The notes under the pieces are model-generated. The model was given only the letters and a program-made list of their open reading frames with translations. It had not been told where the DNA came from and searched no databases. A stretch of 64,000 nucleotides of DNA. Origin: Ginglymostoma cirratum (Eukaryota). Below, piece by piece: positions 6,031 through 37,192 of the stretch; positions within the stretch are counted from its first letter, which is position 1; each line of letters begins with the position of its first letter. The position numbers and the translations under genes were made by a program. The stretch spans positions 10,829,263 to 10,893,262 of the forward strand of contig JAHRHZ010000002.1 of the NCBI GenBank assembly GCA_024137785.1. The letters run 5' to 3'.

Positions 6031-6065
6031 GCATGATTATGGATATGACGAGCTTAATGTAACAG
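6031..6065 (+). CDS. candidate cytoplasmic exon HDYGYDELNVT (YxxL)
   Basis: Very strong acceptor ctcttcctctccttttgcag, donor CAG|GTGACT; only one of three frames is open and it fits phases 2 to 1. Confidence 0.55.
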
Positions 6066-6795
6066 GTGACTAACAAGGAAGTATATATTTTGGGGAAGCT
6101 GGATGGTTTATTATATCTTGCAACCTTTGTCTTGTAACGTCAAGAATTTGAGGCAAGTAGTGATTAATTCAATATGGCTTTGCTCCCCCTGTTGACCGTA
6201 AGTCCCCCCTGTTTATTGGTGCAGGATATTTTTGTGAGTGAAGCAGACAGTTTCCCAGAGTCAACGGAGTGAAATGCTGGCTGATTCGGTATTTCTGTTA
6301 ACTTCCCACAAAGCGAGTTTCGATCCCATCTTTCCAGCTCAGAAAATGACCTGTCAGTTGATACATTTTGACGTTCCTTCCGTGTATGACTCAGAGGGAC
6401 GTAAAGTAACAGGACGTTGAAGTGAAAGCGATGATTATGGAGAGACTTGTCTTAAGGTCCCTTTGTTTCAACTGATGCTGGTTACTGTTAGCACATAAAA
6501 CACTACCTCCTATTTTGCTCCCTTTGAAATACCTGCCCAGATGTAGCGATTTCTGTGGTACACATTGCATATTTTCCCGTTTACATTGAATATGGTACGA
6601 AATGAAAGTGATCTATAACCCTGCAGCAGTGGTGATGTAGGCAAGCAACTTCATCAACTATTCCATTTGAGGAATTTTCACAGTCAGCAATGCTTGAATT
6701 TAAATTGAGAATGTCTTCACCGTTGATTTTAAAATTTGATGAAATCAGGATACAGTTTTTTGAAAATACGAATTTTTTTTTCTCTCACTGTGGAG

Positions 6796-16119: not shown

Positions 16120-17678
16120 TGTCTAAAAGAGGTACTAAAAGATGTTATTGGTGAAATGGCAAATGCACTAGTAATTATGTACCAAACTTCACTGGACTCC
16201 GGGGTCGTTCCCGGAGGTTGGTAAACAGCCAACGTGATACCACTGTTCAAAAAAGGAATTAGACAAAATGCAGGTAACTATAGTCCAGTTAGCTCAACCT
16301 CGGTAGTGGGGAAAATGATTGAATCTATAATTAAGGAAGAATAGTAAGACATCTGGATGCAAATTCTTCTATTGGGAGCACCCAGCATTGGTTCATGAAG
16401 GATAGGTCATGTTTAACGACTTTGGTGGAATTCTTTGAGCACATTACTTGCATGGTGGACAATGGGGAACATGTGGAAGTAGTGTATCTGGATTTTCAGA
16501 AGGCATTTGACAAGGTGCCACACCAAAGGCTGCTAAATAAGATAAAGATGCACTGTATTAGAGGTAATGTATTGGCATGGATAGAGGATTGGATGACCAT
16601 TAGAAAGCAAAGAGTAGGGGTAAATGGGTGTTTTTCTGGTTGGCGGTCAATGGCTAGTGGTGTGCCTCTGGGATGAGCGTTGGGACCGCAATTATTTACA
16701 ATTTACATGGATGATTTGGAGTTGGGGAGGGAGTGTGGTGTGTCAAAATTTGCAGTTGACACTAAGATGAGTGGTAGAGCAAAGTGTGCAGAAGACACTG
16801 AAAGTCTGCAGAGGTATATGGATAGTCTAAGTGAGTGGGCAAATGTCTGGAAGATAGAGTACAATGTTGACAAGTGTGAAGTCATCCATTTTGGTGGGAA
16901 TAACAGCAAAATGGACGAGGTTTTAAATGTGAAAAAATTGCAGCACGCTGCTGTGCAGAGGGACTAGGGTGTCCTTGTGCATGAATCGCTAAAAGTAGGG
17001 CAGCAGGTGCAGCAGGTAATTAAAAAGGCAAGTGGAATTTTGTCTGTCATTGCTCGAGGGATGGAGTTTAAAAAACAGGGAGGCTAAGCTGCAGCCGTAT
17101 AGGGCGCTGGTTCGGCCACACCTGGAGTACTGTGTGCAGTTTTGGTCTCCTTTCCTGCGAAGGGATAAACCAGCACTGGAGGGGAAGCAGAGGAGATTCA
17201 CTCGGTTGATTCCAGAGTTGAAAGGATTGAATTATGAGGAGAGACTGAGTAGAATGGGATTATATTCATTGGAATTCAGAAAAATGAGTGGAGATCTGAT
17301 AAAAACGTCTCAGATTATGAAGGGAATCGATGAGGTGGCAGCAGAGAGGTTGTTTCCATTAGCAGGTGAAACTAGATCTAGGGGGCATAGCCTCACAACA
17401 AAGGGAAGCAGATGAAGGACTGAGGTCAGGAGGAGCTTCTTCACACAAAGGGTGGTGAATCTGTGGAATTCCCTGTTCAGTGAAGCCGTTGAAGCTACCT
17501 CGCTGAATGTGTTTAAGGCAAGGCTGAATTAATATTTGAACAGTCAAGGAATTAAGGGTCATGATGTGCTGGCGGGTAAGTGGAGCTGAGTCTCAAAGAT
17601 CACCCATGATCTTACTGATGGCGGGGCAGACTCGAGGGGCCGGATGGCCGACTCTTGCTCCGACTTCTTATGTTCTTC
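16120..17678 (+). mobile_element. 5'-truncated CR1-clade LINE (disrupted reverse transcriptase and 3' UTR)
   Basis: RT motifs YLDFQKAFDKVPH, GVPLG*.LGPQLF, KFAVDTK (FADD decayed), LVRPHLEYCVQFWSP; stops and frameshifts; cttatgttctt tail. Confidence 0.92.
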
Positions 17679-18415: not shown

Positions 18416-19521
18416 AAATCGCGATGCCACTACCCTAATTTTACTAAAGGAAGCTGTTCTGGCACATGCACTGTTAGGAGAACGGGGCCACGACCCTCGG
18501 GACCGGAATTCCCCACCGATTAATTTTCCAATATTGACGTTCGGGGAATAAGTTACCACCCACGGTGAGACCTATTCCCGCTCCGTGCTTCTCTCCGAAG
18601 CATAACAGCAGTAAATGCATTCTAGAAATGTCTAGCCTCGCACCTGTTATTATTAGGGTAATGATAAAGAAGCCTTTTTCTCTGGGTTAAAAAATTGCCC
18701 CTCACCCCACCCCCTGACCTGTTTTCGACTATCCCATGAGCAAATTCACTTACCACCGGTGTATCTTTGCCTCAGGACAGACATTGGTTGTGTGGGTACA
18801 GGGGATGAGCATTGATGCCCAGTAAATGCTGAACTCCTCAGCAGACTCTGAATAACCGCTGCCTTCACTCGGGAGAACTGTGAAACAAAACCATTGGAGA
18901 TTGGGACATTGAGAGGCGGGATGACGTCAAGAGATGCAACCATCCAATATGAAGAGTTGGCTTTCTTTGTGTTTTGTCAACGCACGCAATATATTTTATT
19001 TTAATAGACACGTATGGAGGTAACAGACCAAAACAGATTTGTTTTCCACTGTCAATTATTTTTTAACACAGAGCTCCAAGCCATATGGAAGAAATGAATT
19101 GAGTGAAGTGTGAGAACAGTGCCTGGCGTCTCAAATGTTCTCTTGTCACAGCGACATTTAGCTCCCGCTGATCACAGTCCCACCGCCAAGTATTGGGCTC
19201 GTCCAAGAAGGTTATAACAGCGAATACACATGCTTTTCGGTTTCATTTTTGTCCTGCCACACTCTTCCCCCACAACCACTCCCCGACACACACACATGCA
19301 CACACACACACAGATACACGCACACATATACGTACACACCCATAGAATCTCTTAACTCGGAGCAAGAAACAATTCAATTAGTCACATTAGCCCGCGCCTT
19401 TCCAGCTGCCCTTCACATTGGGCCTCTTCCAGTTGCCATGCAGTTTCTTTTTCGAAAACGGCGACCGGGAGCGCCAGTCTCAAGGTCCAGGAACGAGCAA
19501 GTTCGATTATTGACGACTCCT

Positions 19522-19762: not shown

Positions 19763-20272
19763 ACTGTGATGGTACTGTCATGGATTTTGAGACCCACTGG
19801 GTTCAAGGCTTAGGCTCTGGGATCATGGGCCAACTCCTCCCACGGCATCCGGTGGAATTTACACGCAGTTGGTAAATAAGCAATGTTCAGATGGTTTCCT
19901 AGGCGCTGTGGATCGTGCAGCGATCTTGTCAGTAGTTGTTCTAACACAATTAGTGACACTGTGGGGAAGGAAGTTTGTTATTCCTATCCAGTGTACCATA
20001 CATATGTGGCAAAACCACAGCAATCTGTAACTGCCTGCTGAAATGGCTCTGCAAGGAACTCAGCTCGAGGGCACATGGAGATGCACAGGCAACATCCCAT
20101 GAAAGAACAAACAGAAACAATTCGTAGCCAGCAGCGATGTATCCTTATATTTGCTAATAAGACCGTTATTTTGGGAGATGCGACAAGTAGAGAAAGGAGC
20201 AATGCATTTTAGGACATCTCCAGCTCTCCCTCCATTACTGACACGATATCACAGAGAGTTCCGGAAGCTTAC

Positions 20273-20460
20273 CTCTCACAGTGAGCCGCGTCCCATATCC
20301 GAGGCATGATTTTTCACGGTGCACTAATGCACCCGTCATCGCTCACGTTCAACTCCTTCATTAGAATCGAAGCACCTTGGCCACGTAAACCTGGTCCTTT
20401 AGGGATCTGTGGGCATGGACTCCACTGGTATTGCTGCAGTCATTTGCCATCTATAAGACC
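20273..20460 (-). pseudogene. relic 3' half of a second VJ-type IgSF (NCR3-like) V exon
   Basis: Reverse strand reads SYRW...GASILMKELNVSDDG-(frameshift)-H*CTVK...GYGTRLTVR, then phase-1 donor GAG|GTAAGC. The 5' side is cut by a CR1-type fragment at ~20472. Confidence 0.8.
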
Positions 20461-25044: not shown

Positions 25045-25087
25045 ATGGCTTCAGGAGCTGTGTTCTGTGTTCTTAGTCTTGGCTTTG
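25045..25087 (+). CDS. NCR3: exon 1 coding part: signal peptide MASGAVFCVLSLGF
   Basis: ATG in strong Kozak context (aaaATGg), hydrophobic leader, phase-1 donor TTG|GTAAGA matching the phase-1 V exon; colinear copy at 47447-47489. Confidence 0.85.
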
Positions 25088-28000
25088 GTAAGATGCCTAA
25101 ATGATGAACTTGTTTGTATTACATGGAACGCCAGGCAAACTTTGAAACGTATGAGGCTTGTATTTGTTGGGGCATGGAACATGTCACATTAGCAATTTAT
25201 CACTGGGTACGCTTTTACTCGGTTATGCCATTTTATTGGAGGTGATTGGGTGAGTGACTGTCCAAGCTTTCATTAACTTACGGACGTGCGTGGGTTCACA
25301 GATCAAATCCATTCGCCTTCACTAAATCCCTACTCTAAAGCTTTTGCAAGCTGCAAGTCATGGGAAGTAACAAGAAGAAATATTTTGCTTCTTTATTTCA
25401 GTTTCTTAATCAATTGTTCCCCACTGGTGACAGCATGCACATCAGAAAAAGTACCTCAGCAAAGTTGTTGATGTCTGGATCAATGGCACAGCGTGAGAGT
25501 TTAAGTCAAGCCAAAAGGCTTTCTGCTTTAAATATTGAACTAAACAGCATGTCATGGGATATGTCAAAAAATAAATAGAGCAACGTTTATTACAGATTAT
25601 TCAAAATGTAGTAAAATGTTTGCCAGGTTATTGGGATGTTGGGGGTGGGAAGAAGAAAAATCTCTTGATACATTTGGAAGTAAAACGAATTACAAGGATA
25701 TTAAAACAGGTGAGATAGAGTCTTGGTCATTTTAAATTAGTTCTTTACAGTCGTGATTTAGCACTAAAACTTACCTTGAAAGTTGACATTTGGCTTAATT
25801 TCTGTCAATTGCGCGCAGTTGACATTGGGATCACGGGAAGTCAACAGCAATGATTAATGTTATAATATCTTTGTAATTGGTGCGCTTTCAAAAATATATG
25901 ACTGTAACATCAGCGATATCATCATGTACTATTCATATCATCACGTAGTGAAAATGTGCTGCTCTTTTGGTTTTTCAATGGAAGGATTGTACAGTTTAAC
26001 ATGTACTTGTGAAATTCATTATCCAATGTTCGATAAAACTGGATAACCTCAAAGATTAACATCTCCGAAAGTGAATTAACTCAATGGCGCGATTATCCTC
26101 CATCATCTTCATCAAAGTAATTACATCTTATTTGTAAATCTATCACAAAACGGTATAGTCGTTGAATCAAATTTCCTATAGTGGGAGAGTTAATCATTTC
26201 ATTTTGGTGTGTGAATGGCTGCACAAACTTTAGACACATACACGCGACTCTTCCGTCGTTTGAATTCCAATAATTGATTTTGGCAAGAATATTACACTCA
26301 GACCCCTCAATGTGGCATAAATGTCTGACTTCAGTGTGAAACGTTGTTTGTTCTTTTACAGCAGTGACTGCTGAGAACATCAAAGTTCTTCAAAGCCCAG
26401 CATTTCTTAATGTAACCGAGGGGACGAAGGCCGCGATGCACTGTGCTTATGAAGGATCTAATGGACCGAGTGTCTTCAGGTGGTTTAGGGACAACACAAA
26501 CGGAACCGAACTTTGTAACAGCACAGCACCATACAGAGGCCGGGTCATTGGGCCAAACAGGGAGAAAATCGACGGAAGGACGGGCGCCTGGATTCAACTA
26601 ACGAATGTGACATTGAGCGATGAGGCGACCTATTATTGCAAAGTTGAGTTTGTCTCAAGCGGTGAACATTGTGGGCAAGGAACAATACTTATTGTGACAG
26701 GTGAGCCTGCAACACGCTGCTACTTTGAACAATGAAGTAGCAAAATTATAGAATTGATGAATCTTTTAGTTCACACCTCCTGTCAGTTGTCAATCTTATA
26801 CAGTAAAGGCCCTACAGACACAAGTTTGCAAATTAAGGAAATTACAAACGCTGATATATACTTTGCTTATTTATCCCGCCATATTTCTTGAACGTCGTTC
26901 AATAATCCGACAGTTCGAACAATTATTTTGGTCCTATCTGCGACATAGAGGTTGCAAGGAACATTGCACCAACAGATTAGGGAGTTGAAAAGAGACAGAC
27001 GCTTTTGAAGTTACAATCACCAGGGAAGCGGGATGACACGTCCCCAGGTCCTGGTCGCACTCTCGTCCACTCTTAAAAGAAATGGCCACTCAGGCTGTAG
27101 ATGCATTGGTGCAAAGTTTCCAAAGTTCGCTGGATTCTGGGAAGTTTTCACCAGCAAAGATTGTGACAAATCGATTCAAGAGGGAGGGAAGCAGAAATTC
27201 TAAAGTTATTTAGCCAGTACGCTGGGCATAGGTCGTTAGTAATCGATGAGCAAGATGAGTTTTAGTTCAGAATTTAGGAAGTCTCAAAGTCTTTGGGAAT
27301 TGTCAGTGCGGTGTTTTGAAAAGGCAATCATGTTTAACAGTTTACACGAGCTCTTTGGATGGACTGCACTGGGATTTACAGATGGCATTTTGCAAGGCTC
27401 TAAGTCCTTGCGGAAAATATAAGTCAGGGGTACAATGTTCGTACGGATAGACATTGGCTGCCTGGCTGGTAGAAAACGAAGAGTATGAGTGAATAATTCC
27501 GTTTTGTTTGGTAAGCTGTGACGGCTGGCCTCCTACACATGTTTGTTGTGGGGCCTATCTTTTTGCAAATTATATCAATAATGTGAATGTGCTGACCAAA
27601 AGCAGACAACTATGTTGACAGATTACTCAGAAATCTGGCGGATGGAATTCAATGAAGGAAAATGTGAATACAATAGTCAGCGACTTCCCTAAATAGCAAA
27701 CTAATGTAGGATTTAGAAGTAGAAATAAATCTAGTGCAGGAATCACATGAGTTCGCGCGCAGTACAGAAAGCAACTAAAACAGATTGTTGAAAAACTCAG
27801 CAGGTCTGGCAACATCTGCGAGAGAGGAACGAATTAACATTTCCAGTCCAATGACCCTTCTTCAGAAATTAATTCAGTTGACTAAAGCAATGCCATTTCT
27901 TATGGTTTTATCTTGATTATCAAGGGGATCAAGGGTTACACTGATAATGCAGGAGAATGGTGTTGAGGAACTTATCAGCCGTGATTGAATGGCGAAGCAG

Positions 28001-31000
28001 TATCGATGGGCCGAATGGCCTAAATTCTGCTCCTCTGTCCTCTGGTTTTATGGTCTTATGGGCTTTTAACTCGTAAAGATCGATAATAAAAGTAGGTACG
28101 TTACGCATCAGTTGTATTGGTGAGACTGCATGCTGTGTAAACTATCCTCCCAATTGTAATATAACATAACTAAAAACCACGAAAATACAACACATATCTA
28201 ATATGCCAACGGCATGTTGGGAAATAGAAATGTAAGCAATCTCACCTTCGGGTTTAATCTGAGGTCAAGAATAAATAGATTTAAAACTATCTGATTCGAT
28301 TCTTCCACGGTATCTGTCACCTTCATGAATTTAGCATCTGATTGCATGTTGAATTGATCCAATACCCAAGCTCTTTGACCATTCTGGCCAAGCGCTTCAT
28401 TGAGGCTTGCCTGCACTCTACAGGAATAAACAGTCGCCCGTGTCTGTTTTAAACATATTTCACTGCACAGAACGTGTGCCTGTCAAAAGTTCACTTGGCC
28501 AGTTCATTGAAAATTGATCGCATCGCGATGCGGAGCCAAGGCCGGCCCCGTTAAAGTCAGTGGAAGAAATGGAGAGTCACCATGGTCCGTTTGTTACTGA
28601 CCAGCTCTATGCAAATTCACTGGACAACGAGAGCGTGACATCGGTGTGAATTCAACCTCGTTCGAGATATTTCTTATCCGCATCAGCGCGGCCTTGTCCC
28701 ACTCCGTTTAGGTTGGTAGAAAGCCAATCGTTTAAAGCACAGTGTTGAGAGTGAGAAGATGGATAAAGGAGACACGTTTCTTGAAGCAGAATGGAATCTG
28801 AGTAATTTACCAATTTAAATCAATTTGCAAGGCGGGCAACAGGAGAAGTTGGGTATTATCGCTAGACTATTAATGCACAGAGTCAGCTAACGTCCTGGGA
28901 ACCCGGTTTCAAATCCGACATTGGCAGCTGGTGGAATTTGAGTTCAATATAGAATTAAGGATCTGAGGTTTTGTTATCGACGATGACTATGAAACTATCG
29001 TTGATTGTTACGAAAAGCCCCCTGATTCATGAATGCATTTTAGGGAAGGGAACTGCCATCCTTAGTTGGTTTGGCCCACATGTGACTCCAGATCCACTGC
29101 ATGTGGTGGACTCTTAACTGTCCTCTGGGCAATTAGGGATGTGCAATAAATGCTGGTCTTGCCAGAGGGACACTCATCCTGTGGCTGAATTTTTAAAAAT
29201 GCATCGTTGTCGTTCGAGTACTGCCCAGTAATCCAGCCGTACGAACGACCAATGCAGTCAGTTTAGGGGAGTTCAAAACTAAAGGGTATAACTTTCAGGT
29301 GAGAGCAGAAAGATTTAAAATAGACCTGGGGTAACGTTTTCATACAGTTCGTATGTGGAATGTGCTGCCAGGTGGTAGATGCAGTTACAGTTAGAACATT
29401 TAACAAACTTTTGAACAGGTACATGAATAGGAAAGGTTTCGGGGGATATGGGCCAAACACAGGCAAGTCGATCTCGTTTGGTACGGGAAACTGGGTCGGC
29501 ATGGACGAGTTGGACCAAAGGGTCTGTTACCTTGCTGTCTGAATCTATGAGAGTGGACTCGGGCAAAAAGAAGATCAATGACATATGTTTCCTTCCGGCA
29601 GCGAGGAGCAGAAATCACGCATCGATCATTCCCAAGGTTGTAACAACAGCTGGATTTCTACTGACCGTATTCACAGTGATAATTGTTGCCATCTGCCGAA
29701 ACAAAATGAAAGGTGCACGTCGCTTCATTGTCTGATCTCAATCCTTCCACATTGCTAGTTATGTCGCGGACATTGCCATGTATCTGTGCTCAGACTGTAT
29801 GTTAAGTTATATGTTTGGAACGCCCAGCTCTCCGACGGTGGAATCAACAACAATTACAGTTCGGCAACGTAAAGAGACCGGTTTCCTCGGGTGGGTTTTG
29901 TTTTTGTTTTGAATCGATGACAAAGTTTAAAACCTGGAATGCCCTCAGTGTTTCAGAAAGTGGAGTGAAATCGGGAAACACAGAAACGTAGCAAATGGGA
30001 GTAGGAGTAGGCCACTCACCTTCACTCTGCACCGTTCAATGCAATCGTGGTTGATCCAGTATCTCAGCGCCATACTCACTTTTTTTCACCACCCAGTAAG
30101 CGAAGATTATTTTTCCCCTCATCTCAGACCCATTGGTCCTAGACTGTAAACTGAGACTGCGAACCCTTGTCCCAGGCACCGCTGTTGTTCCTGTTTGAAA
30201 AAAAGAAACAAAATATTCTTTTTGTCACAATTTTGGGTATCCATTTCGAATTGTCAACTCCAATTAATAACGATAACTATCTCTAACCACGCGCCACATC
30301 AAAGTTACGCGTTCCCGTCCCTGATGACCTACTTGTACCCGTACCCTGCGTCTCGTGGCAAATTCCTAACTCAATTTTCAAATCACATCAACTCTCCTTC
30401 CTAACTTGGCATACGTTTTATGATTTATGTACTAATACAAGGATAAAACTAAAGCATGTATAGATAGAATCTATTATTTTACAACACTAATTATGTTTTA
30501 ATGAACTGAATGCAAATATTGCCCAAAGGTTTACTCAGCTCTCATTTCCCGCCCTGAAAAAATACAGTTACTTCCGACTTATATCTATATTGCAGTCGTA
30601 ATTTATATTGTGTGATAACACACGTATTTCATAGAACAGTTACGGTGGATTATAGACAAGATGTGTTAAAGTAATAAATTGGGAGTAAGCGATTTATTGG
30701 GCGTAGTTGAGCTGAAAAATGTTGAGCTGCGATTTCAAGTCATTTACATCTCTGATGATTTATCCTTTCCCTCCCTACACATCGTACAGAGAAATTGCAC
30801 AGACGACCATTATGCAGAATTGAAGATCAGGTACGTAACATCCCAGAATAACTGAGCTTGGTTATATCTCTTCAGCACTGTGATACCTGTTGGCTAATTG
30901 TTGATGTCTATAACACGCAAAACCAAAATGACTTGGCGAGAGTGTTCATCGATTTATTAAGCAGGGAGCAGGCGTAAAACTCTACAGTGTGCAGATAATA

Positions 31001-34000
31001 ACTATAGTCTCACCTAGTGATTGAAATGCAACACAGTTCTGAACTCCATTCTTCATTTTAATATTCCTTCACGTTATGTTTCTCGTGAATCATTCATTGG
31101 ATGATCCAGGCTAGCATTTATTGCACACCCGTAGTCGCCCTTGAGTATTTGGTGGTGAGCAACATTCTGGAGCTGCTGCAGTATCGGGGTAGAATCAGAA
31201 CCGTACAGTACAGAGGAGGTGTTTGGACCCATCAAGACTCCGCTGACAAAAACTGCTCTAAATCCACGCAAGTCCCACTTTCCAGTACTTGGCTCATAAA
31301 TGTTGTGAAATTTCAAGTGTTTATCCAAACATTTTCTAAAGGTTGTAAGGTTTCCTGCCTCAACTACCTTCCCAGGCAGGGCATTCCGTATTTCTAACAC
31401 CCTCTGGGTGAATTTCGTTTTCCTCAAATCACCTTCAAATACCTTTTATCTTAAACTATAGCCCTTTCTAGCTAACCCTTCAAATAAAGAGAGCATTGCT
31501 TTCTATCTACCCTGTACATGTGCCTGATAATTTTTTACACAACGATAATGTCTTCTCTTAGCTTTCGCTGCTGTACTGAAAACAGCCCAAGCTTATCCAG
31601 CCTCCATTCATCGCCAAACCACTCCACCTGAAGCAACATCTTAGTGATTCGCCTTTGCATCCCCTCCAGTACAATGACATCCTTCCCTTAGTGATGCAGA
31701 ACTGAACGGGTCTAACATATCCTCTCTGTTTTCATAATTTATCCCACGAGTGATAAAGACAAGTGTTCCGCATTCTTTCTCAATTAACATCCTAATACTT
31801 TCAGGAATCTGTTGACAAGCACCCTAAGATCCCTCTCTTCACTTAATTTTTTCAGTGTCCTGCCATTCATTGCATACTCCTCGTCTTTTTTTATTTCTCT
31901 GAGCTGCATCAGCTCACATTTATCAAGGTTAAATTCCATCTGACATCACTCTGCGCATGTGACCAATCTTTTTATATCTTCCTGTGAACTAGGATGTTCT
32001 TCCACACTATCGACCATCTGGTCAAACTTTGTGTCATCCGAAAAATTATTTATCATCCGTCCCCACCCTCACACTTTTTCTTCTATTTGTAAATCATTTG
32101 TAAATATCACAAGCAATAAAGGACTCAGTAATGACCTCTTGGGTCATGACCGGACACAGGCCTCCAATAAAACAAGCAAATTTCCACCACCACCTTAGTG
32201 CTCCTAGCACTAAGTCAACTTTGGATCCAACTTGCCAAGTTACCCTAGATCCCATGTGGCTGAAAGTTTTTTTTTAAAATATCAGTCTTCCCTGTGGAAA
32301 CTTTGCCGAAATCCGTACAGGCGAATCAACTGTTCTATCCTCATGTACACACCTTGTCACCTCCTCGAAAATTCCTATCAAATTTGTTCAGCATGTCTTC
32401 CCTCTGATAAAGCCATGATGACTATCCCTAATCACACCTTGCCCGTTCAAATGGAAATTAAATTTCTCCTCAGAATTTTATTCAATAGATTTCTTACCAC
32501 TAGTATGACAGTCAGGTGCAGGCGTAATTATGGGGTGAGTTCCAGGATTCTGGCCCAACATCATGTATAATTTACATAATTCTCTCACTTTGATTGGTGT
32601 CATTCTGTGCCAATATTCAACTCTGTCAAAGAGTCTCCATAACTTAATCAACATCTGCAATTAATTAAATAGTTTCCTTAAAGACTACGTCTTTACTTTT
32701 GGGATAGCTCGCATCGTTCATTAAAAACCGAAAGAAATGAGGATGCTGTAAATCAGAAGCAAAAACAGAAGCTGCCGGGAAAGCTCAGCAGGTCTGGCAG
32801 CATCTGTGAAGAAAATATCAGAGATAACGTTTCGGGTCCCGTTCTGAGGAAGGGTCACCGGACCCGAAAAGTTAACTCTCATTTTTTTTCACAGATGCTG
32901 CCACACCTTCCGAGCTTTTCCAGCAACTTCTGTTTTTGTCGCATAGTCCATTATCTTTTGAATAATGACCATCCTGTTGTAAATTATTGTCTTTTCATCA
33001 CATGAAGTAAATCGGGTGGCGTAGTGGGTCAGTGGTTAGTACCGCCGTCTCACAGAACACGTGTCTGCGTGCATTCCCTCCCTCAGTTGAAAGATGAGCA
33101 GGTTGGGTCGATTGGCAATGCAAAAATATCCTTCGTGCCTCGAGATGTGCAGGCTAAGTCGATTCACATGCAAAATGCAAGGTTTCTGGGATAGAGTGGG
33201 ATGATCTTCAGGAAGCCAGCGTACACTCGATGGGCCAAACGGCCTGCTTCCACACTGCAGACATTCTACGAATTAATTGTGCCTTTTGTTTTTATTACTT
33301 TCATTTGAAAAGCAAGCAATTCCCTTACGTTCTACAAACCAGAATTAAAACCTAATATTTAGGTTTTTTTTTCTTCTTCATGCTATTTTATGATCTTGAA
33401 GCCGTGTAACAAATTATACCTCCATAAAATTTAGGAAACAACATACATTAACACTGTAAGCAGTAACGCTAATTATAGTTTCGGGAAGGAAAGTGCCATC
33501 CTTACTGGTCTGACCTATATGTGACTCCAGACGCAATATATGTTGCCTTGCCAGCGAAGCCGTCATCTCGCGAATGAATAAGCTAAAAAAAGGTTCCGAG
33601 TACTCAGACAGTTCGCACCCAACTTCCGAACCTGTGGTCGCTAGATTCTGATACATGGAAATCAGAGCAAACCCCTTCCTTGGTCATATTTTTTATTGGC
33701 ATTTCACAGTTATGAAAGTTACTGTGGCGTGTTTCTGCTCGTCTAGCCAATGAATGTTTAAGTTATGTGTTGAACCAACTCAGTATTTCATTGGTGAGCA
33801 GCGAAAAGAACAGCCTAGCGCCCCCTCTCTCAAGGGCTTTTAGCATGCAGTGACAGCGTTCCAAACATTGTACTCGGAGACCTGAGTTCAGGTTGCACTT
33901 CCTCCGGCGGTGTCTATTAATATCTCTGAGCTGGTTAATTGGAAAATTCCTGAATCCTGTTCTGCCGTCATTTATTACGTCTTGAAGCAACCCATGTAAC

Positions 34001-35205
34001 AGCTGCATGTGTTTAGACGTAAAATATTTTCTTTAAAACAAAGCAAAATCCATTAGAAATCAATTTAGTGTATTCAAATAACACATTTTACTGTTCTTGT
34101 CATTTAATAATACTACAAGCTGATTCAAAAAAGGTATTTTGCCCACGACGATGTCCAGTCAATAAATCAATACATTTCTCATCTCCAAGATAGCAATTGA
34201 GTTTAGTTGATGGGTCTGTTTTCATGCTTGTCAATAATTCCTCAACTTTAGGGTGCCAATTCTTGATTGAAAACGCTGACTAAGAACAATTTACAGAGAA
34301 ACACAAAAGAAGATGAACCTACCAAGTGAATATATCGACAGCATGAATATATATTTATGTATTCTTCGATTTATTTGTATCCACTTTGTTAACCATTTTT
34401 GTGCACTTGGCATATTGGTAATGTATTCTATTTATCTTCAACCAGGAAAATGGAGAAGATACGGTGCAATATTGCGCACTGGACTTTAAAAAAATGGAGC
34501 GAACGTTCATAGAGAAAGACAAGGTGGCATACAATTTATCAAAAGATTTATGTTCACGTTACTTACCTTGATATCACAGAATTATCGGTGACATTACGCA
34601 ATATGAAAAGATTTCATTCAATTGTATCTCATGGTCAGTCGGTTTCTCCACCTATCCTTCATAATATTAATATTAGAATTCACACTGAAAAGTCCATCAG
34701 CATCATTACATAGAATGTTCAAAACTGTTATTGTCCCTTAATATATCATGATTACTCCAAGACATGAATTACCCAAGAGAATTAGCCATGATGTAATTCA
34801 GCGTTGGTTGATGAATATGATTAAGCTATAGAACGTGCAGATCAAGTTCACTGATCAATTAATTCGAGTAAGCAAGTTCGTCGTTAAAGGTAGCTGGTTA
34901 ATTTACAGGTTATCTGTTTTCTCGTTTGAATTCCGAATACTCGCTGGTATCTTGAGAAAAAAAATACTCAAAAGCAGTTGGACACAAAACATGGCAATGT
35001 ACCACGGATCTTCAATATATAAAATGCAAATTGATGTGTAGCTGGAGAAACACACAAAACAAATATTGTTGAATTAATAATTGAATATTGTTGAAATAAT
35101 AATGTGTGATCCTAATTACGTTCATATTTTTCTTTCCTCAAACAGACAGGTGCAGAGGACAATTTACAATATTGCTCATTAAAATTGAATTTTAAAGAAA
35201 AGTGA
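25045..35205 (+). CDS. NCR3: NKp30/NCR3-family single V-domain type I membrane receptor, inhibitory form (2 ITIMs); spliced CDS join(25045..25087,26362..26700,29602..29712,30790..30830,34446..34523,35146..35205), 223 aa
   Basis: All introns are GT-AG with matching phases (1,1,1,0,0). Exon lengths sum to 672 nt = 223 aa + TGA. Product: MASGAVFCVLSLGFAVTAENIKVLQSP...WFRD...YRGRV...DEATYYCKVEFVSSGEHCGQGTILIVTARSRNHASIIPKVVTTAGFLLTVFTVIIVAICRNKMKEKLHRRPLCRIEDQENGEDTVQYCALDFKKMERTFIEKDKTGAEDNLQYCSLKLNFKEK. The V domain and the TM AGF motif resemble human NKp30 as recalled. The symbol denotes family membership, not proven orthology. Confidence 0.85.
26362..26700 (+). CDS. NCR3: exon 2: V-set Ig domain with germline-joined J-like G strand (CGQGTILIV)
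   Basis: Acceptor ttcttttacag (NAGNAG), donor ACAG|GTGAGC. B-strand Cys, C-strand WFRD, D-x-A-x-Y-Y-C and GxGT all in one exon. Four N-x-S/T sequons (NVT, NGT, NST, NVT). Matches ORF 26364..26735. Confidence 0.95.
28840..29550 (+). mobile_element. SINE followed by a CR1-type LINE 3' fragment in intron 2
   Basis: SINE body ending caataaatgctgg (to ~29195); CR1 tail with DAVTVRTFNKLLNRYMNRKG; both also present in unit 2 (~51580-52285). Confidence 0.7.
29602..29712 (+). CDS. NCR3: exon 3: short stalk and transmembrane segment
   Basis: Acceptor gtttccttccggcag; phase 1 to 1; hydrophobic VVTTAGFLLTVFTVIIVAIC followed by basic RNKMK; donor AAG|GTGCAC (weak). Confidence 0.88.
30790..30830 (+). CDS. 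NCR3: exon 4: cytoplasmic (E)KLHRRPLCRIEDQ
   Basis: Pyrimidine tract plus tacag acceptor, donor CAG|GTACGT; 41 nt converts phase 1 to the phase 0 needed by the ITIM exons. Confidence 0.72.
31190..32480 (-). mobile_element. degenerate CR1-type LINE fragment in intron 4
   Basis: FTQRVLEIRNALPGKVVEAGNLTTFRKCLD in ORF 31074..31427; copy at ~53935-55230. Confidence 0.8.
32723..32940. mobile_element. palindromic Penelope-like repeat, second subfamily
   Basis: Inverted arms aaaaacagaagctgccgggaaagctcagcaggtctggcagcatctgtg / cacagatgctgcc...ttctgtttttg around ctgaggaagggtcaccggacccgaaa; copy at 55461-55680. Confidence 0.65.
33816..33832 (-). promoter_or_regulatory. candidate CTCF site
   Basis: Reverse strand TGAGAGAGGGGGCGCTA matches the 3' part of the CTCF core (AGGGGGCGCTA). 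Confidence 0.35.
34446..34523 (+). CDS. NCR3: exon 5: cytoplasmic, ITIM 1 (VQYCAL)
   Basis: Acceptor tttatcttcaaccag; 78 nt phase 0-0 encoding ENGEDTVQYCALDFKKMERTFIEKDK; donor AAG|GTGGCA; fits V/I/L/S-x-Y-x-x-L/V. Confidence 0.8.
35146..35205 (+). CDS. NCR3: exon 6 coding part: ITIM 2 (LQYCSL) and stop
   Basis: Strong acceptor tttttctttcctcaaacag; TGAEDNLQYCSLKLNFKEK-TGA; candidate ATTAAA at 35353-35358. Confidence 0.82.
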   Translation, partial: TGAEDNLQYCSLKLNFKEK

Positions 35206-35824
35206 AAACCAGTACGTCTGAAGATAAGAACAAGAGAAGATTACGTTGGATTTGTGAAATATGTCCCAAACTTGAAGTCAGTCAACATGTTTATCTCCAA
35301 AATGATTGTATATTTTAAAGATGTGCGATTCAGCATATCTATCGACCTATCTATTAAACGAGCACTGTAAGCCATTCAGCCCCTCCAGCTTGCATTGACG
35401 GAATAAGTGATGGCTGATCATCCACTTAATTGCCATATCTCCTCACTATCCCCATGCCCCTTAATACTTCTAGAAAATAGAAATCTATCGACCTCTGTCT
35501 TGAACTAACTTAATGACTGAGGTTTCAGAGCCCTCTGAAGTACAGAATTTTACAAATGCATCACCTCCCAGTGAAGAAGATTCTTCTTCACATAGTTCTA
35601 TATCGTTTGGCCTTTATTCTAAGACTGTGTGCCTCGGTTTTAAACCACTCCCCACCCCCGGCGCCGGCTAGGAGAAACGTCCTTTCTCCATTTATTCTCT
35701 ATATCGTTTAAATAATTTCATATGCTTCAACGAGGTTGCCTCTTATTTTTCTAAACTCCGTAGAATACAGGCAAAGTCTCCTCATCAGTCGTCATAGGAT
35801 AGTCCCAACATACCTGTATTCAAA

Positions 35825-37192
35825 CCTTTGTGGTTTTCCCGCATAATGTCTGGAAAGAATATCCAGTTTTATAACATTGGCCAAAGAATTGATTAAAAAT
35901 TTTGGGTCACCATGTATATCATTTGAACGCTGCATAGATTTAATAGGCAATAAACATTTCTGGCTTTCCCCCCAGGACAGGTATGTCCATCCTCATGATA
36001 GGGGACGATATAAACATACAATACTCTGGAGACAGTCTAGTCAGTGCTCTACATAACTGAACTTCGGTTTCTTTGCTCCTGTGCTCAATCACTTCTTGTG
36101 ATAAAGTGTAACAGATCTTTTGACTTCTGAGTCTCATGCTGTTGCATCTCTAGGCTAACTTTCAGGGACTTAAAGACAAGGGCATCGAAATTACAGTTTT
36201 AACTAGTAGTACATGTTAACTTTCTTTAAACTGTTTACATGCAGGTATAATCTATTTACTTGTAATAATTATTCTTACTCAGCACAGAAACCTGGTCGGT
36301 GTTTTCTATCAATATAGGTCAGAAAATCAGTAACATTGGGTAACGTTGCAAAGTCTTTCAGTTTTGTGATGATTCCGGGAATAACAGGGTTGTATTTCCA
36401 AGGTGCTACTCCAGCGAGCGGCGTCAACTCTTATCAGCTTTGGCAGACAAAACTTCGCCTTCATAAATCCAAGTCGACTCTATCCAATCAGAGCATTATG
36501 TTCTAATTATTACAGGAGTCAAAACTTTTCTAATACATTCTAGATTGTTTCCATTGATGTCAGGCTAACAGAGCTCTAATTCAATCTTTTTCTCGCTCCC
36601 CCCATTCTTAAACCTTGGAAGGGGACATTTAGAATCTTCACCATTGCAAACTTAATTGAACATTGAAAGATAGCATCAATGTATCCAATAGTCTATCTAA
36701 CTAGTCACTAATTGATCGATCCTTCCACTGATCCATCCACCCACCAATACATCTTCTGTTCATCTAACATCCATCCGTCCATCTCCTGACTCTGTCATCC
36801 ATCGATTTATATATTTCTAAAATAAAATTCTTTCAATTTAACTGAATAGAAATCAGACAAATTCTTGGTCCCATGTTAGATTGACTATGCTGTTGTTATG
36901 ATGTGATACAGATTGTCAGCCAAATAGAAATTTGTAATGACAGCCATTGACTCTAGTCACTGAGTGAGAGTGCCATTTGACATTTCTGAGGAAGAACTAA
37001 AAATCTATTTCCTAGCAATCTCGACAAATTCCACAGAGCCGTAATCTAAGTAGTCTTCTTACACCTTTTGTGGTTTTCCTGCATAATGTCTGGAAAGAAT
37101 ATCCAGTTTTATAGCATTGGCCAAAGAATTGATTAAAACTTTTGGGTAACAATGTATATCATTTGAACGCTGCATAGATTTAATAGGCAATG
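35825..37192. repeat. ~128-bp dispersed direct repeat (35825-35952 and 37063-37192)
   Basis: gtggttttcc.gcataatgtctggaaagaatatccag...gatttaataggcaat present twice with few mismatches. Confidence 0.9.

What the first reader, a model, noticed from the sequence alone, without database searches (positions are those of the whole stretch)
25045..35205. An intact inhibitory NKp30-like receptor: uncharged TM and two ITIMs
Seen: a phase-consistent six-exon gene with leader, one VJ-type domain, a TM core without a charged residue, and tail motifs VQYCAL and LQYCSL. Known: mammalian NKp30 is activating and uses a TM Arg just before AGF (LLLRAGF) to pair with CD3zeta/FcRgamma; divergent MHC-linked NCR3 families are already reported in sharks. 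Here that position is Thr (TTAGF). Inference: this member has the opposite polarity and recruits SHP-1/2. Whether this subtype is already described cannot be told from the sequence.
Basis: partly seen in the sequence, partly recalled or inferred. Interest (0 to 1): 0.8.

Follow-up and report, generated by a model that had tools for sequence, protein, structure and literature searches.

The report
Inhibitory-type shark NKp30-family receptor gene
This is a real, spliced and transcribed shark gene of the NKp30 (NCR3) immune-receptor family whose tail carries two classic inhibitory (ITIM) motifs. The same design is already predicted in at least three other sharks, so it is a further member of a known kind and not a new type of receptor.

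Summary
A six-exon, 223-aa gene sits at 25045-35205 (+), every intron is GT..AG, and the frame is open throughout. Transcript contigs from two public runs carry exactly the predicted joints TM exon>30790, 30830>34446 and 34523>35146.

The V exon is a germline VJ-type V-set domain. Human NKp30 is its best match among solved structures, both by sequence and by predicted fold. In trees it falls in the cartilaginous-fish clade that holds a deposited nurse-shark NCR3, apart from SIRP and TCR-alpha V domains.

The hydrophobic core (V140-C159) has no charged residue, but a Lys (K139) sits directly at its outer edge. The 64-aa tail has VQYCAL (Y187) and LQYCSL (Y213), 26 residues apart.

Colinear orthologues with an uncharged TM and VQYC.L exons are already RefSeq predictions in white shark, catshark and horn shark. 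ITIM-type tails also occur in Xenopus, newt and lungfish NCR3(-like) proteins. This scan has already followed up other ITIM-type NKp30-family genes elsewhere in the same genome.

Inhibitory signalling through SHP phosphatases is the best reading but is untested.

A tandem copy at 47.4-57.8 kb is a pseudogene. One lead is worth noting: a bamboo-shark relative with a 75-77% identical V domain has a TM arginine and no ITIM tail, which could indicate a paired activating/inhibitory system.

The parts
25045..25087 (+). Exon 1: ATG and leader peptide (MASGAVFCVLSLGF + first base of Ala15); phase 1 at the donor
   Evidence: donor GTAAGA. The leader aligns with the white shark and catshark orthologue leaders MAFSLVLCILNLGF / MVFSLVLCLLTLG.
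26362..26700 (+). Exon 2: single germline VJ-type V-set Ig domain (C42, W55, C107, J-like G119-Q-G121-T-I-L-I-V) with four N-x-S/T sites
   Evidence: Pfam V-set E 4.8e-12. Best PDB sequence hit is human NKp30, E 3.9e-8. AF2 model pLDDT 95, and the top four Foldseek PDB hits are all NKp30. Trees.
29602..29712 (+). Exon 3: short stalk (ARSRNHASIIP), boundary Lys139, TM core V140-C159, stop-transfer RNKMK; phase 1 to 1, so skipping it keeps the frame
   Evidence: hydropathy. The joint 29712>30790 is seen in transcript contigs.
30790..30830 (+). Exon 4: membrane-proximal cytoplasmic segment (E)KLHRRPLCRIEDQ
   Evidence: Joints are seen on both sides in X2 and X3 contigs. Colinear with GKRDERQSSTIDIQ / EKHDERPPSRNDNQ in the orthologues.
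34446..34523 (+). Exon 5: first ITIM exon, ENGEDTVQYCALDFKKMERTFIEKDK; ITIM VQYCAL = 34464-34481 (Y187)
   Evidence: Homologous to NEVDNVQYCTLNFNEGKRTFRTSIDKDK (white shark) and the catshark and horn shark equivalents.
35146..35205 (+). Exon 6 coding part: second ITIM exon, TGAEDNLQYCSLKLNFKEK*; ITIM LQYCSL = 35164-35181 (Y213); TGA at 35203-35205. It is a paralogue of exon 5.
   Evidence: Matches TNEVDNVQYCTLKINEEQ (white shark X4) and TNEADNVQYCTLTFN (horn shark).
35206..35970 (+). Probable 3' UTR, with AATAAA at 35949-35954 (the end is inferred)
   Evidence: The X2 contig of 927 nt runs from exon 4 through exon 6 and past 35400. If colinear it ends near 35951. Sequence read.
47447..57789 (+). 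Decayed tandem duplicate of the whole gene (about 80-94% identity). Lesions: ATG>GTG; 1-bp and 5-bp deletions in the V exon; CGA>TGA just after the TM; exon 4 acceptor AG>AC; exon 5 acceptor AG>AT plus a 1-bp insertion. It has an extra 18 bp (6 aa) in the stalk compared with the intact copy.

Best explanation
The locus encodes a type I membrane receptor of the cartilaginous-fish NCR3 (NKp30) family. It consists of a leader, one non-rearranging VJ-type V domain, a very short stalk, a single TM helix with no charged residue in its core, and a 64-aa tail with two ITIMs (Y187 and Y213, 26 residues apart), each on its own phase-0 exon.

Shown here: the gene is intact. The TM-to-tail splice pattern is used in transcripts. 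The V domain is NKp30-like by sequence, profile, predicted fold and phylogeny. The TM/tail design is conserved in orthologues from three other shark orders.

Inferred: on ligand engagement (ligand unknown, possibly a B7H6-like molecule), Src-family kinases phosphorylate the two ITIM tyrosines. The tandem SH2 domains of SHP-1/SHP-2 dock on them and activation signals in the lymphocyte are damped. On this reading it is an inhibitory counterpart within a family that also has TM-Lys/Arg, adaptor-coupled members.
For: The gene model is phase-consistent with canonical splice sites. Three predicted joints are seen in transcript contigs of two runs with 0-1 mismatches.

The V exon scores Pfam V-set 4.8e-12. 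Human NKp30 is the top PDB hit for the single sequence (36.9 bits). For a family profile NKp30 scores 94.8 bits against 78.9 for the best other single V domain, SIRP beta-1. The AF2 model (pLDDT 95) has NKp30 as Foldseek ranks 1-4 (TM 0.75-0.80, rmsd 2.6-3.1 A, against 4.6-5.7 A for the next hits).

In the careful ML tree, win_V joins the QYC-type shark clade at 100/99. That clade sits in a cartilaginous clade with nurse shark NCR3 QTT61898.1 (93/90), joined to sturgeon, lungfish, newt and Xenopus NCR3(-like) (85/79), and apart from mammalian SIRP and TCR-alpha.

The orthologues P0154 (white shark), P0155 (catshark) and P0004/P0151 (horn shark) have uncharged TMs and VQYC[TA]L exons colinear with exons 5 and 6. 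The TM core is uncharged. No alternative Arg-type TM exon exists in the window. The tandem copy has decayed while this one stayed intact.
Against: There are no functional data: phosphorylation, SHP binding, ligand and expressing cell type are all unknown.

Lys139 abuts the TM core and could in principle contact an adaptor. A poly-A RNA-seq run of the same species (24% of it read) had no exon reads, so expression is restricted or low. The kind of runs X2 and X3 is not on record, and they are taken as RNA only because their contigs are spliced.

The E1-E2 and E2-E3 joints were not observed in reads. No mammalian NKp30 sequence could be placed in the tree. The deeper nodes are only moderately supported (93/90 and 85/79).
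Confidence: 0.72

Rival explanations
1. Dual or adaptor-coupled receptor. Lys139 at the outer TM edge would pair with an acidic TM residue of a DAP12/FcR-gamma/CD3-zeta-like adaptor, so the receptor could also activate. Precedents are NKp44 or KIR2DL4, which combine a charged TM residue with an ITIM.
For: A Lys lies directly before the hydrophobic core. The family does contain TM-charged members: nurse shark NCR3 QTT61904.1 with 'LTGLKLAVF' and bamboo shark XP_043533794.1 with 'IAIRVIV'. From established knowledge, the human NKp30 arginine is also near the stalk/TM interface.
Against: The Lys follows a Pro and precedes a full 20-residue core, which is the usual place for a flanking, snorkelling residue. 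The orthologues have no basic residue there; white shark and horn shark have Asp further out in the stalk. In the pseudogene copy the same Lys lies 6 residues further from the core, so its closeness here comes from an indel relative to that copy.
Confidence: 0.1
2. The tyrosine motifs act mainly as YxxL sorting or endocytosis signals, or bind other SH2 proteins. The protein would then be a decoy, an adhesion molecule or a ligand-clearing receptor and not an SHP-coupled inhibitor. A TM-less secreted isoform could be part of this.
For: YCAL and YCSL also fit Yxx-hydrophobic. The white shark gene has an annotated isoform that skips the TM exon (P0001), and exon 3 here is frame-neutral.
Against: Both motifs also have the -2 V/L that defines ITIMs. 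There are acidic residues upstream and a 26-residue spacing, as in tandem-ITIM receptors (my own knowledge of KIR, SIRP-alpha and PD-1). The -2 position is conserved as V or L in every orthologue motif.
Confidence: 0.12
3. It is not of the NKp30 lineage. On this reading it belongs to a separate shark VJ-type IgSF family (SIRP-like, as RefSeq names two of the relatives), and the NKp30 resemblance is generic V-domain similarity.
For: RefSeq calls the white shark and bamboo shark relatives 'signal-regulatory protein beta-1-like'. The single-sequence margin of NKp30 over other V domains in PDB is small (36.9 against 34-36 bits). No mammalian NKp30 is in the tree, and the node joining shark and bony-vertebrate NCR3 scores 85/79.
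Against: By profile NKp30 beats SIRP by 16 bits. By fold NKp30 fills ranks 1-4 with much lower rmsd. The tree puts mammalian SIRP on another branch and puts this gene with a deposited nurse shark NCR3. There is no C1 domain, unlike SIRPs. The horn shark and catshark orthologues are named NCR3-like.
Confidence: 0.1
4. A transcribed but non-functional gene copy (an expressed pseudogene or an assembly artefact).
For: It lies in a birth-and-death cluster next to a dead duplicate and V-exon relics. Expression was seen in only one study.
Against: The open frame is complete, all six exons have canonical splice sites, and the canonical Ig residues are retained. Transcripts from two samples match the assembly exactly. 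The sister copy shows what decay looks like over the same period.
Confidence: 0.04

Closest known systems
Human NKp30 / NCR3 (PDB 3NOI, 3PV6, 6YJP)
   Same: A single N-terminal VJ-type V-set domain encoded by one exon. It is the best sequence hit, the best profile hit and the best fold hit. About 29-31% identity over the domain. One Ig domain followed by a short stalk and one TM.
   Different: Human NKp30 has a TM arginine and signals through CD3-zeta/FcR-gamma (PMC5371597) and has no tandem ITIM tail. This gene has an uncharged TM core and two ITIMs. The ligand here is unknown.
Nurse shark NCR3 family (Kinlein et al. 2021, Immunogenetics 73:333; deposits QTT61898.1 and QTT61904.1 seen here)
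   Same: Same cartilaginous-fish clade in the tree (93/90). Same overall design. The family already includes uncharged-TM members with tyrosine tails (QTT61898.1) and TM-Lys members (QTT61904.1).
   Different: Only 38-40% identical in the V domain to QTT61898.1, so this is a different subtype. I found no deposited protein at 90% identity or more, but the word search is not exhaustive. The paper itself is not held, so I cannot say whether this subtype or its ITIMs are described there.
RefSeq orthologue predictions: Heterodontus francisci XP_067865381.1/XP_067865380.1 (NCR3-like), Scyliorhinus canicula NCR3-like X2 (P0155), Carcharodon carcharias SIRP beta-1-like X2/X4 (P0154/P0001)
   Same: 53-65% identical V domain. 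Same exon-by-exon layout. Uncharged TM. One or two VQYC[TA]L/VQYSAL ITIM exons followed by the 'DKDK' end. A TM-skipping isoform and a read-through-after-exon-5 isoform both have counterparts in the sequence here.
   Different: Different species and orders. They have longer stalks (about 17-18 aa against 12) and lack the AGF tripeptide and the boundary Lys. They are automated predictions with inconsistent names and no functional study that I could find.
Chiloscyllium plagiosum XP_043533794.1 ('SIRP beta-1-like', P0002)
   Same: It is the nearest V domain of all: 75-77% identity, sister to this gene at 100/99.
   Different: Two tandem V domains, a TM with an arginine (HIAIRVIVLALF), a short tail and no ITIM, which makes it an activating-type design. 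No such TM exon exists in this window.
Tandem-ITIM IgSF inhibitory receptors (SIRP-alpha, PD-1, KIR2DL, LAIR-1)
   Same: It works like these on paper: an Ig ectodomain, an uncharged TM and two tyrosine motifs about 25-30 residues apart.
   Different: It is not a member. SIRP V domains fall on another branch. PD-1 and CD28-family proteins are absent from the best 60 PDB sequence hits and the top 50 fold hits. There is no C1 or C2 domain.

Membership tests
NKp30 / NCR3 family | Single N-terminal V-set Ig domain of the non-rearranging VJ type (V and the J-like GxGTxLxV motif in one exon) | tested here: met
   One 339-nt exon encodes C42...W55...YYC107...C-G119-Q-G121-T-I-L-I-V.
NKp30 / NCR3 family | V domain closer to NKp30 than to other V-set families by sequence or profile | tested here: met
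   NKp30 is the top PDB hit for the single exon (E 3.9e-8, small margin). For the family profile it scores 94.8 bits against 78.9 for SIRP beta-1. Part of that profile consists of proteins already named NCR3-like, so the test is partly circular.
NKp30 / NCR3 family | Predicted fold closest to the NKp30 crystal structures | tested here: met
   Foldseek ranks 1-4 are 3NOI, 6YJP and 3PV6, with TM 0.75-0.80 and rmsd 2.6-3.1 A.
NKp30 / NCR3 family | Phylogenetic grouping with accepted NCR3 sequences | tested here: inconclusive
   It groups with nurse shark NCR3 (93/90) and with bony-vertebrate NCR3(-like) (85/79), apart from SIRP and TCR-alpha. No mammalian NKp30 could be obtained as a tool sequence, and the deep nodes are not strongly supported.
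NKp30 / NCR3 family | TM arginine for coupling to CD3-zeta/FcR-gamma (mammalian NKp30) | tested here: not met
   The core VVTTAGFLLTVFTVIIVAIC has no charge and there is only a flanking Lys139. This feature defines mammalian NKp30 but not the wider vertebrate family, in which deposited shark, Xenopus, newt and lungfish members also lack it.
NKp30 / NCR3 family | Linkage to the MHC | not testable with these tools
   The window holds only NKp30-like genes, relics and repeats.
NKp30 / NCR3 family | Binding of B7H6 | not testable with these tools
   This needs a binding experiment.
ITIM-bearing inhibitory immunoreceptors (functional class) | Cytoplasmic [S/I/V/L]xYxx[I/V/L] motif(s) | tested here: met
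   VQYCAL (Y187) and LQYCSL (Y213). Both are conserved in the orthologues.
ITIM-bearing inhibitory immunoreceptors (functional class) | No charged residue inside the TM helix | tested here: met
   The 20-residue core is uncharged. The caveat is Lys139 at its edge.
ITIM-bearing inhibitory immunoreceptors (functional class) | Phosphorylation-dependent recruitment of SHP-1/SHP-2/SHIP and inhibition of activation | not testable with these tools
   This needs biochemical and cellular assays.
CD28 / PD-1 family | V domain grouping with CD28/CTLA4/PD-1 and family CDR3 motifs (Pro-rich, EIP and similar; PMC11599192) | tested here: not met
   No CD28-family chain appears among the best 60 PDB sequence or profile hits or the top 50 fold hits. 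The FG loop is VEFVSSGEHCGQG and has no such motif.

The most novel reading that the evidence does not exclude
This gene and a TM-arginine, ITIM-less relative with a 75-77% identical V domain (known so far only from the bamboo shark, XP_043533794.1) may be the two arms of a paired inhibitory/activating NKp30 system in orectolobiform sharks. The ITIM tail is shared by shark, lungfish, newt and frog NCR3-like proteins, so it may be the ancestral state of NKp30. Mammalian activating NKp30 would then be the derived form.
Probability: 0.3. Interest if true: 0.55.

Novelty: new member of a known kind. Interest (0 to 1): 0.3.

Why it matters
NKp30 is one of the few NK-cell receptors traceable from sharks to humans, and in mammals it is a textbook activating receptor. 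This gene adds a verified, transcribed, apparently undeposited inhibitory-type member to the shark family. The ITIM-exon cassette (ED..[VL]QYC.L) is conserved across four shark orders. Together with ITIM tails in amphibian and lungfish NCR3-like proteins, this supports the view that inhibitory signalling is an old and possibly original property of the family. It also gives a concrete pair of sequences (an ITIM type and a TM-Arg type with near-identical V domains) for testing paired-receptor evolution at the base of jawed vertebrates. In itself it is an incremental annotation result.

Tried and rejected
- My first exon ends, read by eye, were off by 1-2 nt and broke the frame. They were corrected.
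- The word search with the V exon found only one protein, because of the length window.
- Searching by P0002 region found four proteins but missed horn shark P0004. The word search is therefore not exhaustive, and 'undeposited' is tentative.
- An attempt to pull mammalian NKp30 into the session through a toad relative that shares GTGNGTRL returned only anuran proteins. The trees therefore lack mammals.
- Kinlein 2021, Flajnik 2012 and Ohta & Flajnik 2015 are not held. Full-text searches for NKp30/NCR3 with ITIM plus shark, cartilaginous, Xenopus or nurse shark found no description of ITIM-type shark NKp30.
- CD28/PD-1 membership was rejected.
- An alternative Arg-type TM exon inside this gene was looked for and not found.
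- Further intact V exons in the window: none. There are only the pseudogene V and two decayed relics.
- The poly-A run X5 and run X6 gave no exon reads.
All searches used single exons by reference. The joined translation was computed only in local scripts to check the frame.

Full report
**Observation**

I re-derived the gene model by script. The exons are 25045-25087, 26362-26700, 29602-29712, 30790-30830, 34446-34523 and 35146-35205 on the + strand. Every intron is GT..AG and the phases are consistent. The result is 672 nt = 223 aa, ending in TGA. The window has no N.

The parts of the protein are as follows.
- A hydrophobic leader.
- One V exon with C42, W55, the YYC107 motif and a J-like C-G-Q-G-T-I-L-I-V end.
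- A 12-residue stalk.
- Lys139 followed by the 20-residue core VVTTAGFLLTVFTVIIVAIC (best Kyte-Doolittle 19-mer 2.53).
- RNKMK and a 64-residue tail with VQYCAL (Y187) and LQYCSL (Y213).

The two ITIM exons are paralogues of each other (ED..QYC.L) and are both phase 0-0. The TM exon is phase 1-1. Each of these exons can therefore be skipped or duplicated without breaking the frame.

**Transcription and splicing**

One run search and one read-laying run were allowed.

Contigs of runs X2 and X3 (one study, two samples) carry GT..AG joints that resolve to 29712>30790, 30830>34446 and 34523>35146. Depths are 27/19, 20/11 and 20/11.

One 169-nt contig holds 27 upstream letters, all of exon 3 and 30 nt of exon 4. 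One 927-nt contig holds 40 nt of exon 4, then exon 5, exon 6 and about 750 nt of 3' sequence. If colinear, that contig ends near an AATAAA at 35949.

The pieces have 0-1 mismatches to this locus, so they come from this copy and not from the 86-94% identical pseudogene.

The kind of these runs is not on record. I take them as RNA because their contigs are spliced and because a 285-Mb run could not assemble a shark genome locus at depth 20.

A poly-A RNA-seq run (about a quarter of it read) and one other transcriptomic run showed no exon reads. Expression is therefore restricted or low.

They are supported by exact colinearity with the orthologue proteins.

**What the V domain is**

- Pfam gives V-set (4.8e-12).
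- Among all PDB chains, the four human NKp30 entries are the best hits of the single exon (E about 4e-8, 36.9 bits), though the margin over scFv, JAM and TCR V domains is small.
- A profile of 15 relatives raises NKp30 to 94.8 bits (E 5e-26). The best other single V domain, SIRP beta-1, scores 78.9 bits.
- An AlphaFold2 model of the exon (pLDDT 95) has NKp30 structures at Foldseek ranks 1-4 (TM 0.75-0.80, rmsd 2.6-3.1 A). The next hits, antibody light chains and SIRP-alpha, are at rmsd 4.6-5.7 A.

A search of 1.84 billion cluster representatives gave 282 relatives. Source names for 30 of them show deposited or predicted NCR3 from nurse shark, two bamboo sharks, horn shark, catshark, elephant shark, sturgeon, lungfish, newt and frogs.

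In a careful ML tree of 49 V domains:
- This exon is sister to the two V domains of bamboo shark XP_043533794.1 (100/99).
- It lies inside a clade with the white shark, catshark and horn shark orthologues (100/99).
- That clade lies inside a cartilaginous-fish clade containing nurse shark NCR3 QTT61898.1 (93/90).
- The cartilaginous clade joins bony-vertebrate NCR3(-like) (85/79).
- Mammalian SIRP and TCR-alpha V domains lie elsewhere.

A quick tree of 83 rows gave the same picture. I could not get a mammalian NKp30 sequence into the session, so the link to mammals rests on the PDB sequence, profile and fold results.

CD28/PD-1 membership finds no support.

**Orthologues and what is conserved**

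The relevant proteins are white shark P0154/P0001, catshark P0155 and horn shark P0004/P0151.

They align exon by exon with this gene:
- leader: MAFSLVLCILNLGF
- V domain: 53-65% identity
- a stalk beginning A-R/K-x-x-N-Q
- an uncharged TM
- a basic stop-transfer sequence
- an exon-4 equivalent
- an exon-5 equivalent, NE.DNVQYC/S.L...DKDK
- where annotated, a second ITIM exon, TNE.DNVQYCTL...

The white shark X4 isoform skips the TM exon. The white shark X2 and catshark X2 isoforms end by reading through the exon-5 donor (VACGF.../TACG). Here the same read-through would give VAYNLSKDLCSRYLP*.

These species represent four shark orders, so the ITIM cassette has been kept for a very long time. 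That argues for function.

ITIM-type ends also occur in:
- bamboo shark NCR3 GCC38504.1 (VQYAEI)
- horn shark XP_067865395.1 (VQYATL, VLYATV)
- lungfish (LQYAML, VVYASV)
- newt (VEYVSL, VLYADI)
- Xenopus tropicalis NCR3 (LVYSTV)

The family also has charged-TM, short-tailed members: nurse shark QTT61904.1 (TM Lys) and bamboo shark XP_043533794.1 (TM Arg).

The architecture, the coordinates and the NKp30 affinity are right. Two points need correction.

First, the TM core is uncharged, but Lys139 touches it. It follows a Pro and precedes a full-length core, so I read it as a flanking residue. The orthologues have no basic residue there. In the pseudogene copy the same Lys lies six residues further out. 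The intact copy's stalk is about 6 aa shorter than the pseudogene's and about 5-6 aa shorter than the orthologues' stalks.

Second, the equivalence 'LLLR-AGF versus TT-AGF' is fragile. AGF occurs only in this gene and its pseudogene and not in the orthologues. The safe statement is 'no arginine anywhere in the TM', not 'Arg replaced by Thr'.

**Mechanism**

The best reading (confidence about 0.7) is an inhibitory receptor. The steps would be ligand binding by the V domain, phosphorylation of Y187 and Y213 (each preceded by acidic residues), and docking of the tandem SH2 domains of SHP-1/2. The 26-residue spacing is in the range of KIR, SIRP-alpha and PD-1, from my own knowledge. All of these steps are inferred.

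The rivals are adaptor coupling through Lys139, tyrosine motifs used for sorting or for other SH2 partners, non-NKp30 ancestry, and an expressed pseudogene. They are listed with tests.

**Context in the window**

The whole gene is duplicated in tandem about 22.4 kb downstream (47.4-57.8 kb, 80-94% identity). That copy has:
- lost its ATG
- two frameshifting deletions in the V exon
- a TGA directly after the TM
- two destroyed acceptors
- a 1-bp insertion in exon 5

Upstream there is a decayed minus-strand V exon of another subtype (18534-18815) and a J-like relic (20238-20342). There is also a broken LINE reverse transcriptase (16395-16964) and a tail micro-exon of an upstream paralogue (6032-6067, HDYGYDELNV, like catshark XP_038671255.1). 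No Arg-type TM exon is hidden in the window. This is a typical birth-and-death receptor cluster.

**Novelty**

Earlier notes of this scan call the genome nurse shark. I did not verify this; my nearest relatives are orectolobiform, which is consistent. The notes report that other ITIM-type NKp30-family genes in this genome have already been followed up and judged undeposited members of a known kind.

My own evidence leads to the same class. Orthologues exist as RefSeq predictions under inconsistent names, and the family is published (Kinlein et al. 2021; only the title and accessions could be verified, through PMC12272517 and PMC12227049). I found no deposited protein at 90% identity or more, but that search is not exhaustive. 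The key papers are not held, so whether the ITIM subtypes are discussed in print remains open.

The most interesting residue is the near-identical V domain on a TM-Arg receptor in bamboo shark. It suggests a paired inhibitory/activating system and, together with the wide spread of ITIM tails, an inhibitory ancestral state for NKp30.

Noticed in passing
window 47447-57789 (+): A tandem duplicate of the whole six-exon gene, now a pseudogene. Lesions: ATG>GTG; 1-bp and 5-bp deletions in the V exon; CGA>TGA after the TM; acceptors AG>AC (exon 4) and AG>AT (exon 5); a 1-bp insertion in exon 5. It has an extra 18 bp in the stalk compared with the intact copy.
   Followed up: yes
window 18534-18815 (-): A decayed V exon with several stops, of a different NKp30-like subtype. 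It is closest to the horn shark and catshark multi-V proteins P0005 and P0010.
   Followed up: partly
window 20238-20342 (-): A J-like relic '...YGTRLTVR' with a very weak profile match.
   Followed up: partly
window 6032-6067 (+): The micro-exon-like match HDYGYDELNVTG to the tail of catshark XP_038671255.1 (P0010). It probably belongs to the tail of an upstream NKp30-like gene that starts before the window.
   Followed up: no
window 16395-16964 (+): Broken reverse-transcriptase ORFs (Pfam RVT_1), which is a LINE fragment.
   Followed up: partly
window 32652-33045 (also 55497-55676, with a related piece near 27790-27870): A high-copy hairpin-forming repeat in intron 4. It reaches summed depth of about 70,000 in the transcript contigs and produces many 'opposite strands' joints. 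It looks like a SINE or MITE-like element, not part of the gene.
   Followed up: no
window 26362-26700 (C65 in 'TELCNST' and C117 in 'GEHCGQG'): There are two extra cysteines in the V domain besides the canonical pair. Both are also present in the pseudogene. The bamboo shark relative has only the first, and the other orthologues have neither. From their strand positions in the model (C' and G) an intradomain bond looks unlikely, and a role in dimerisation is possible.
   Followed up: partly
window 34524-34571 (+): Reading through the exon-5 donor gives VAYNLSKDLCSRYLP*. This is homologous to the alternative C-termini annotated in white shark X2 (VACGFLKDELVFYHPTS) and catshark X2 (TACG). A low-depth X3 contig (34500-34650) crosses this donor, so a one-ITIM isoform may exist.
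   Followed up: partly
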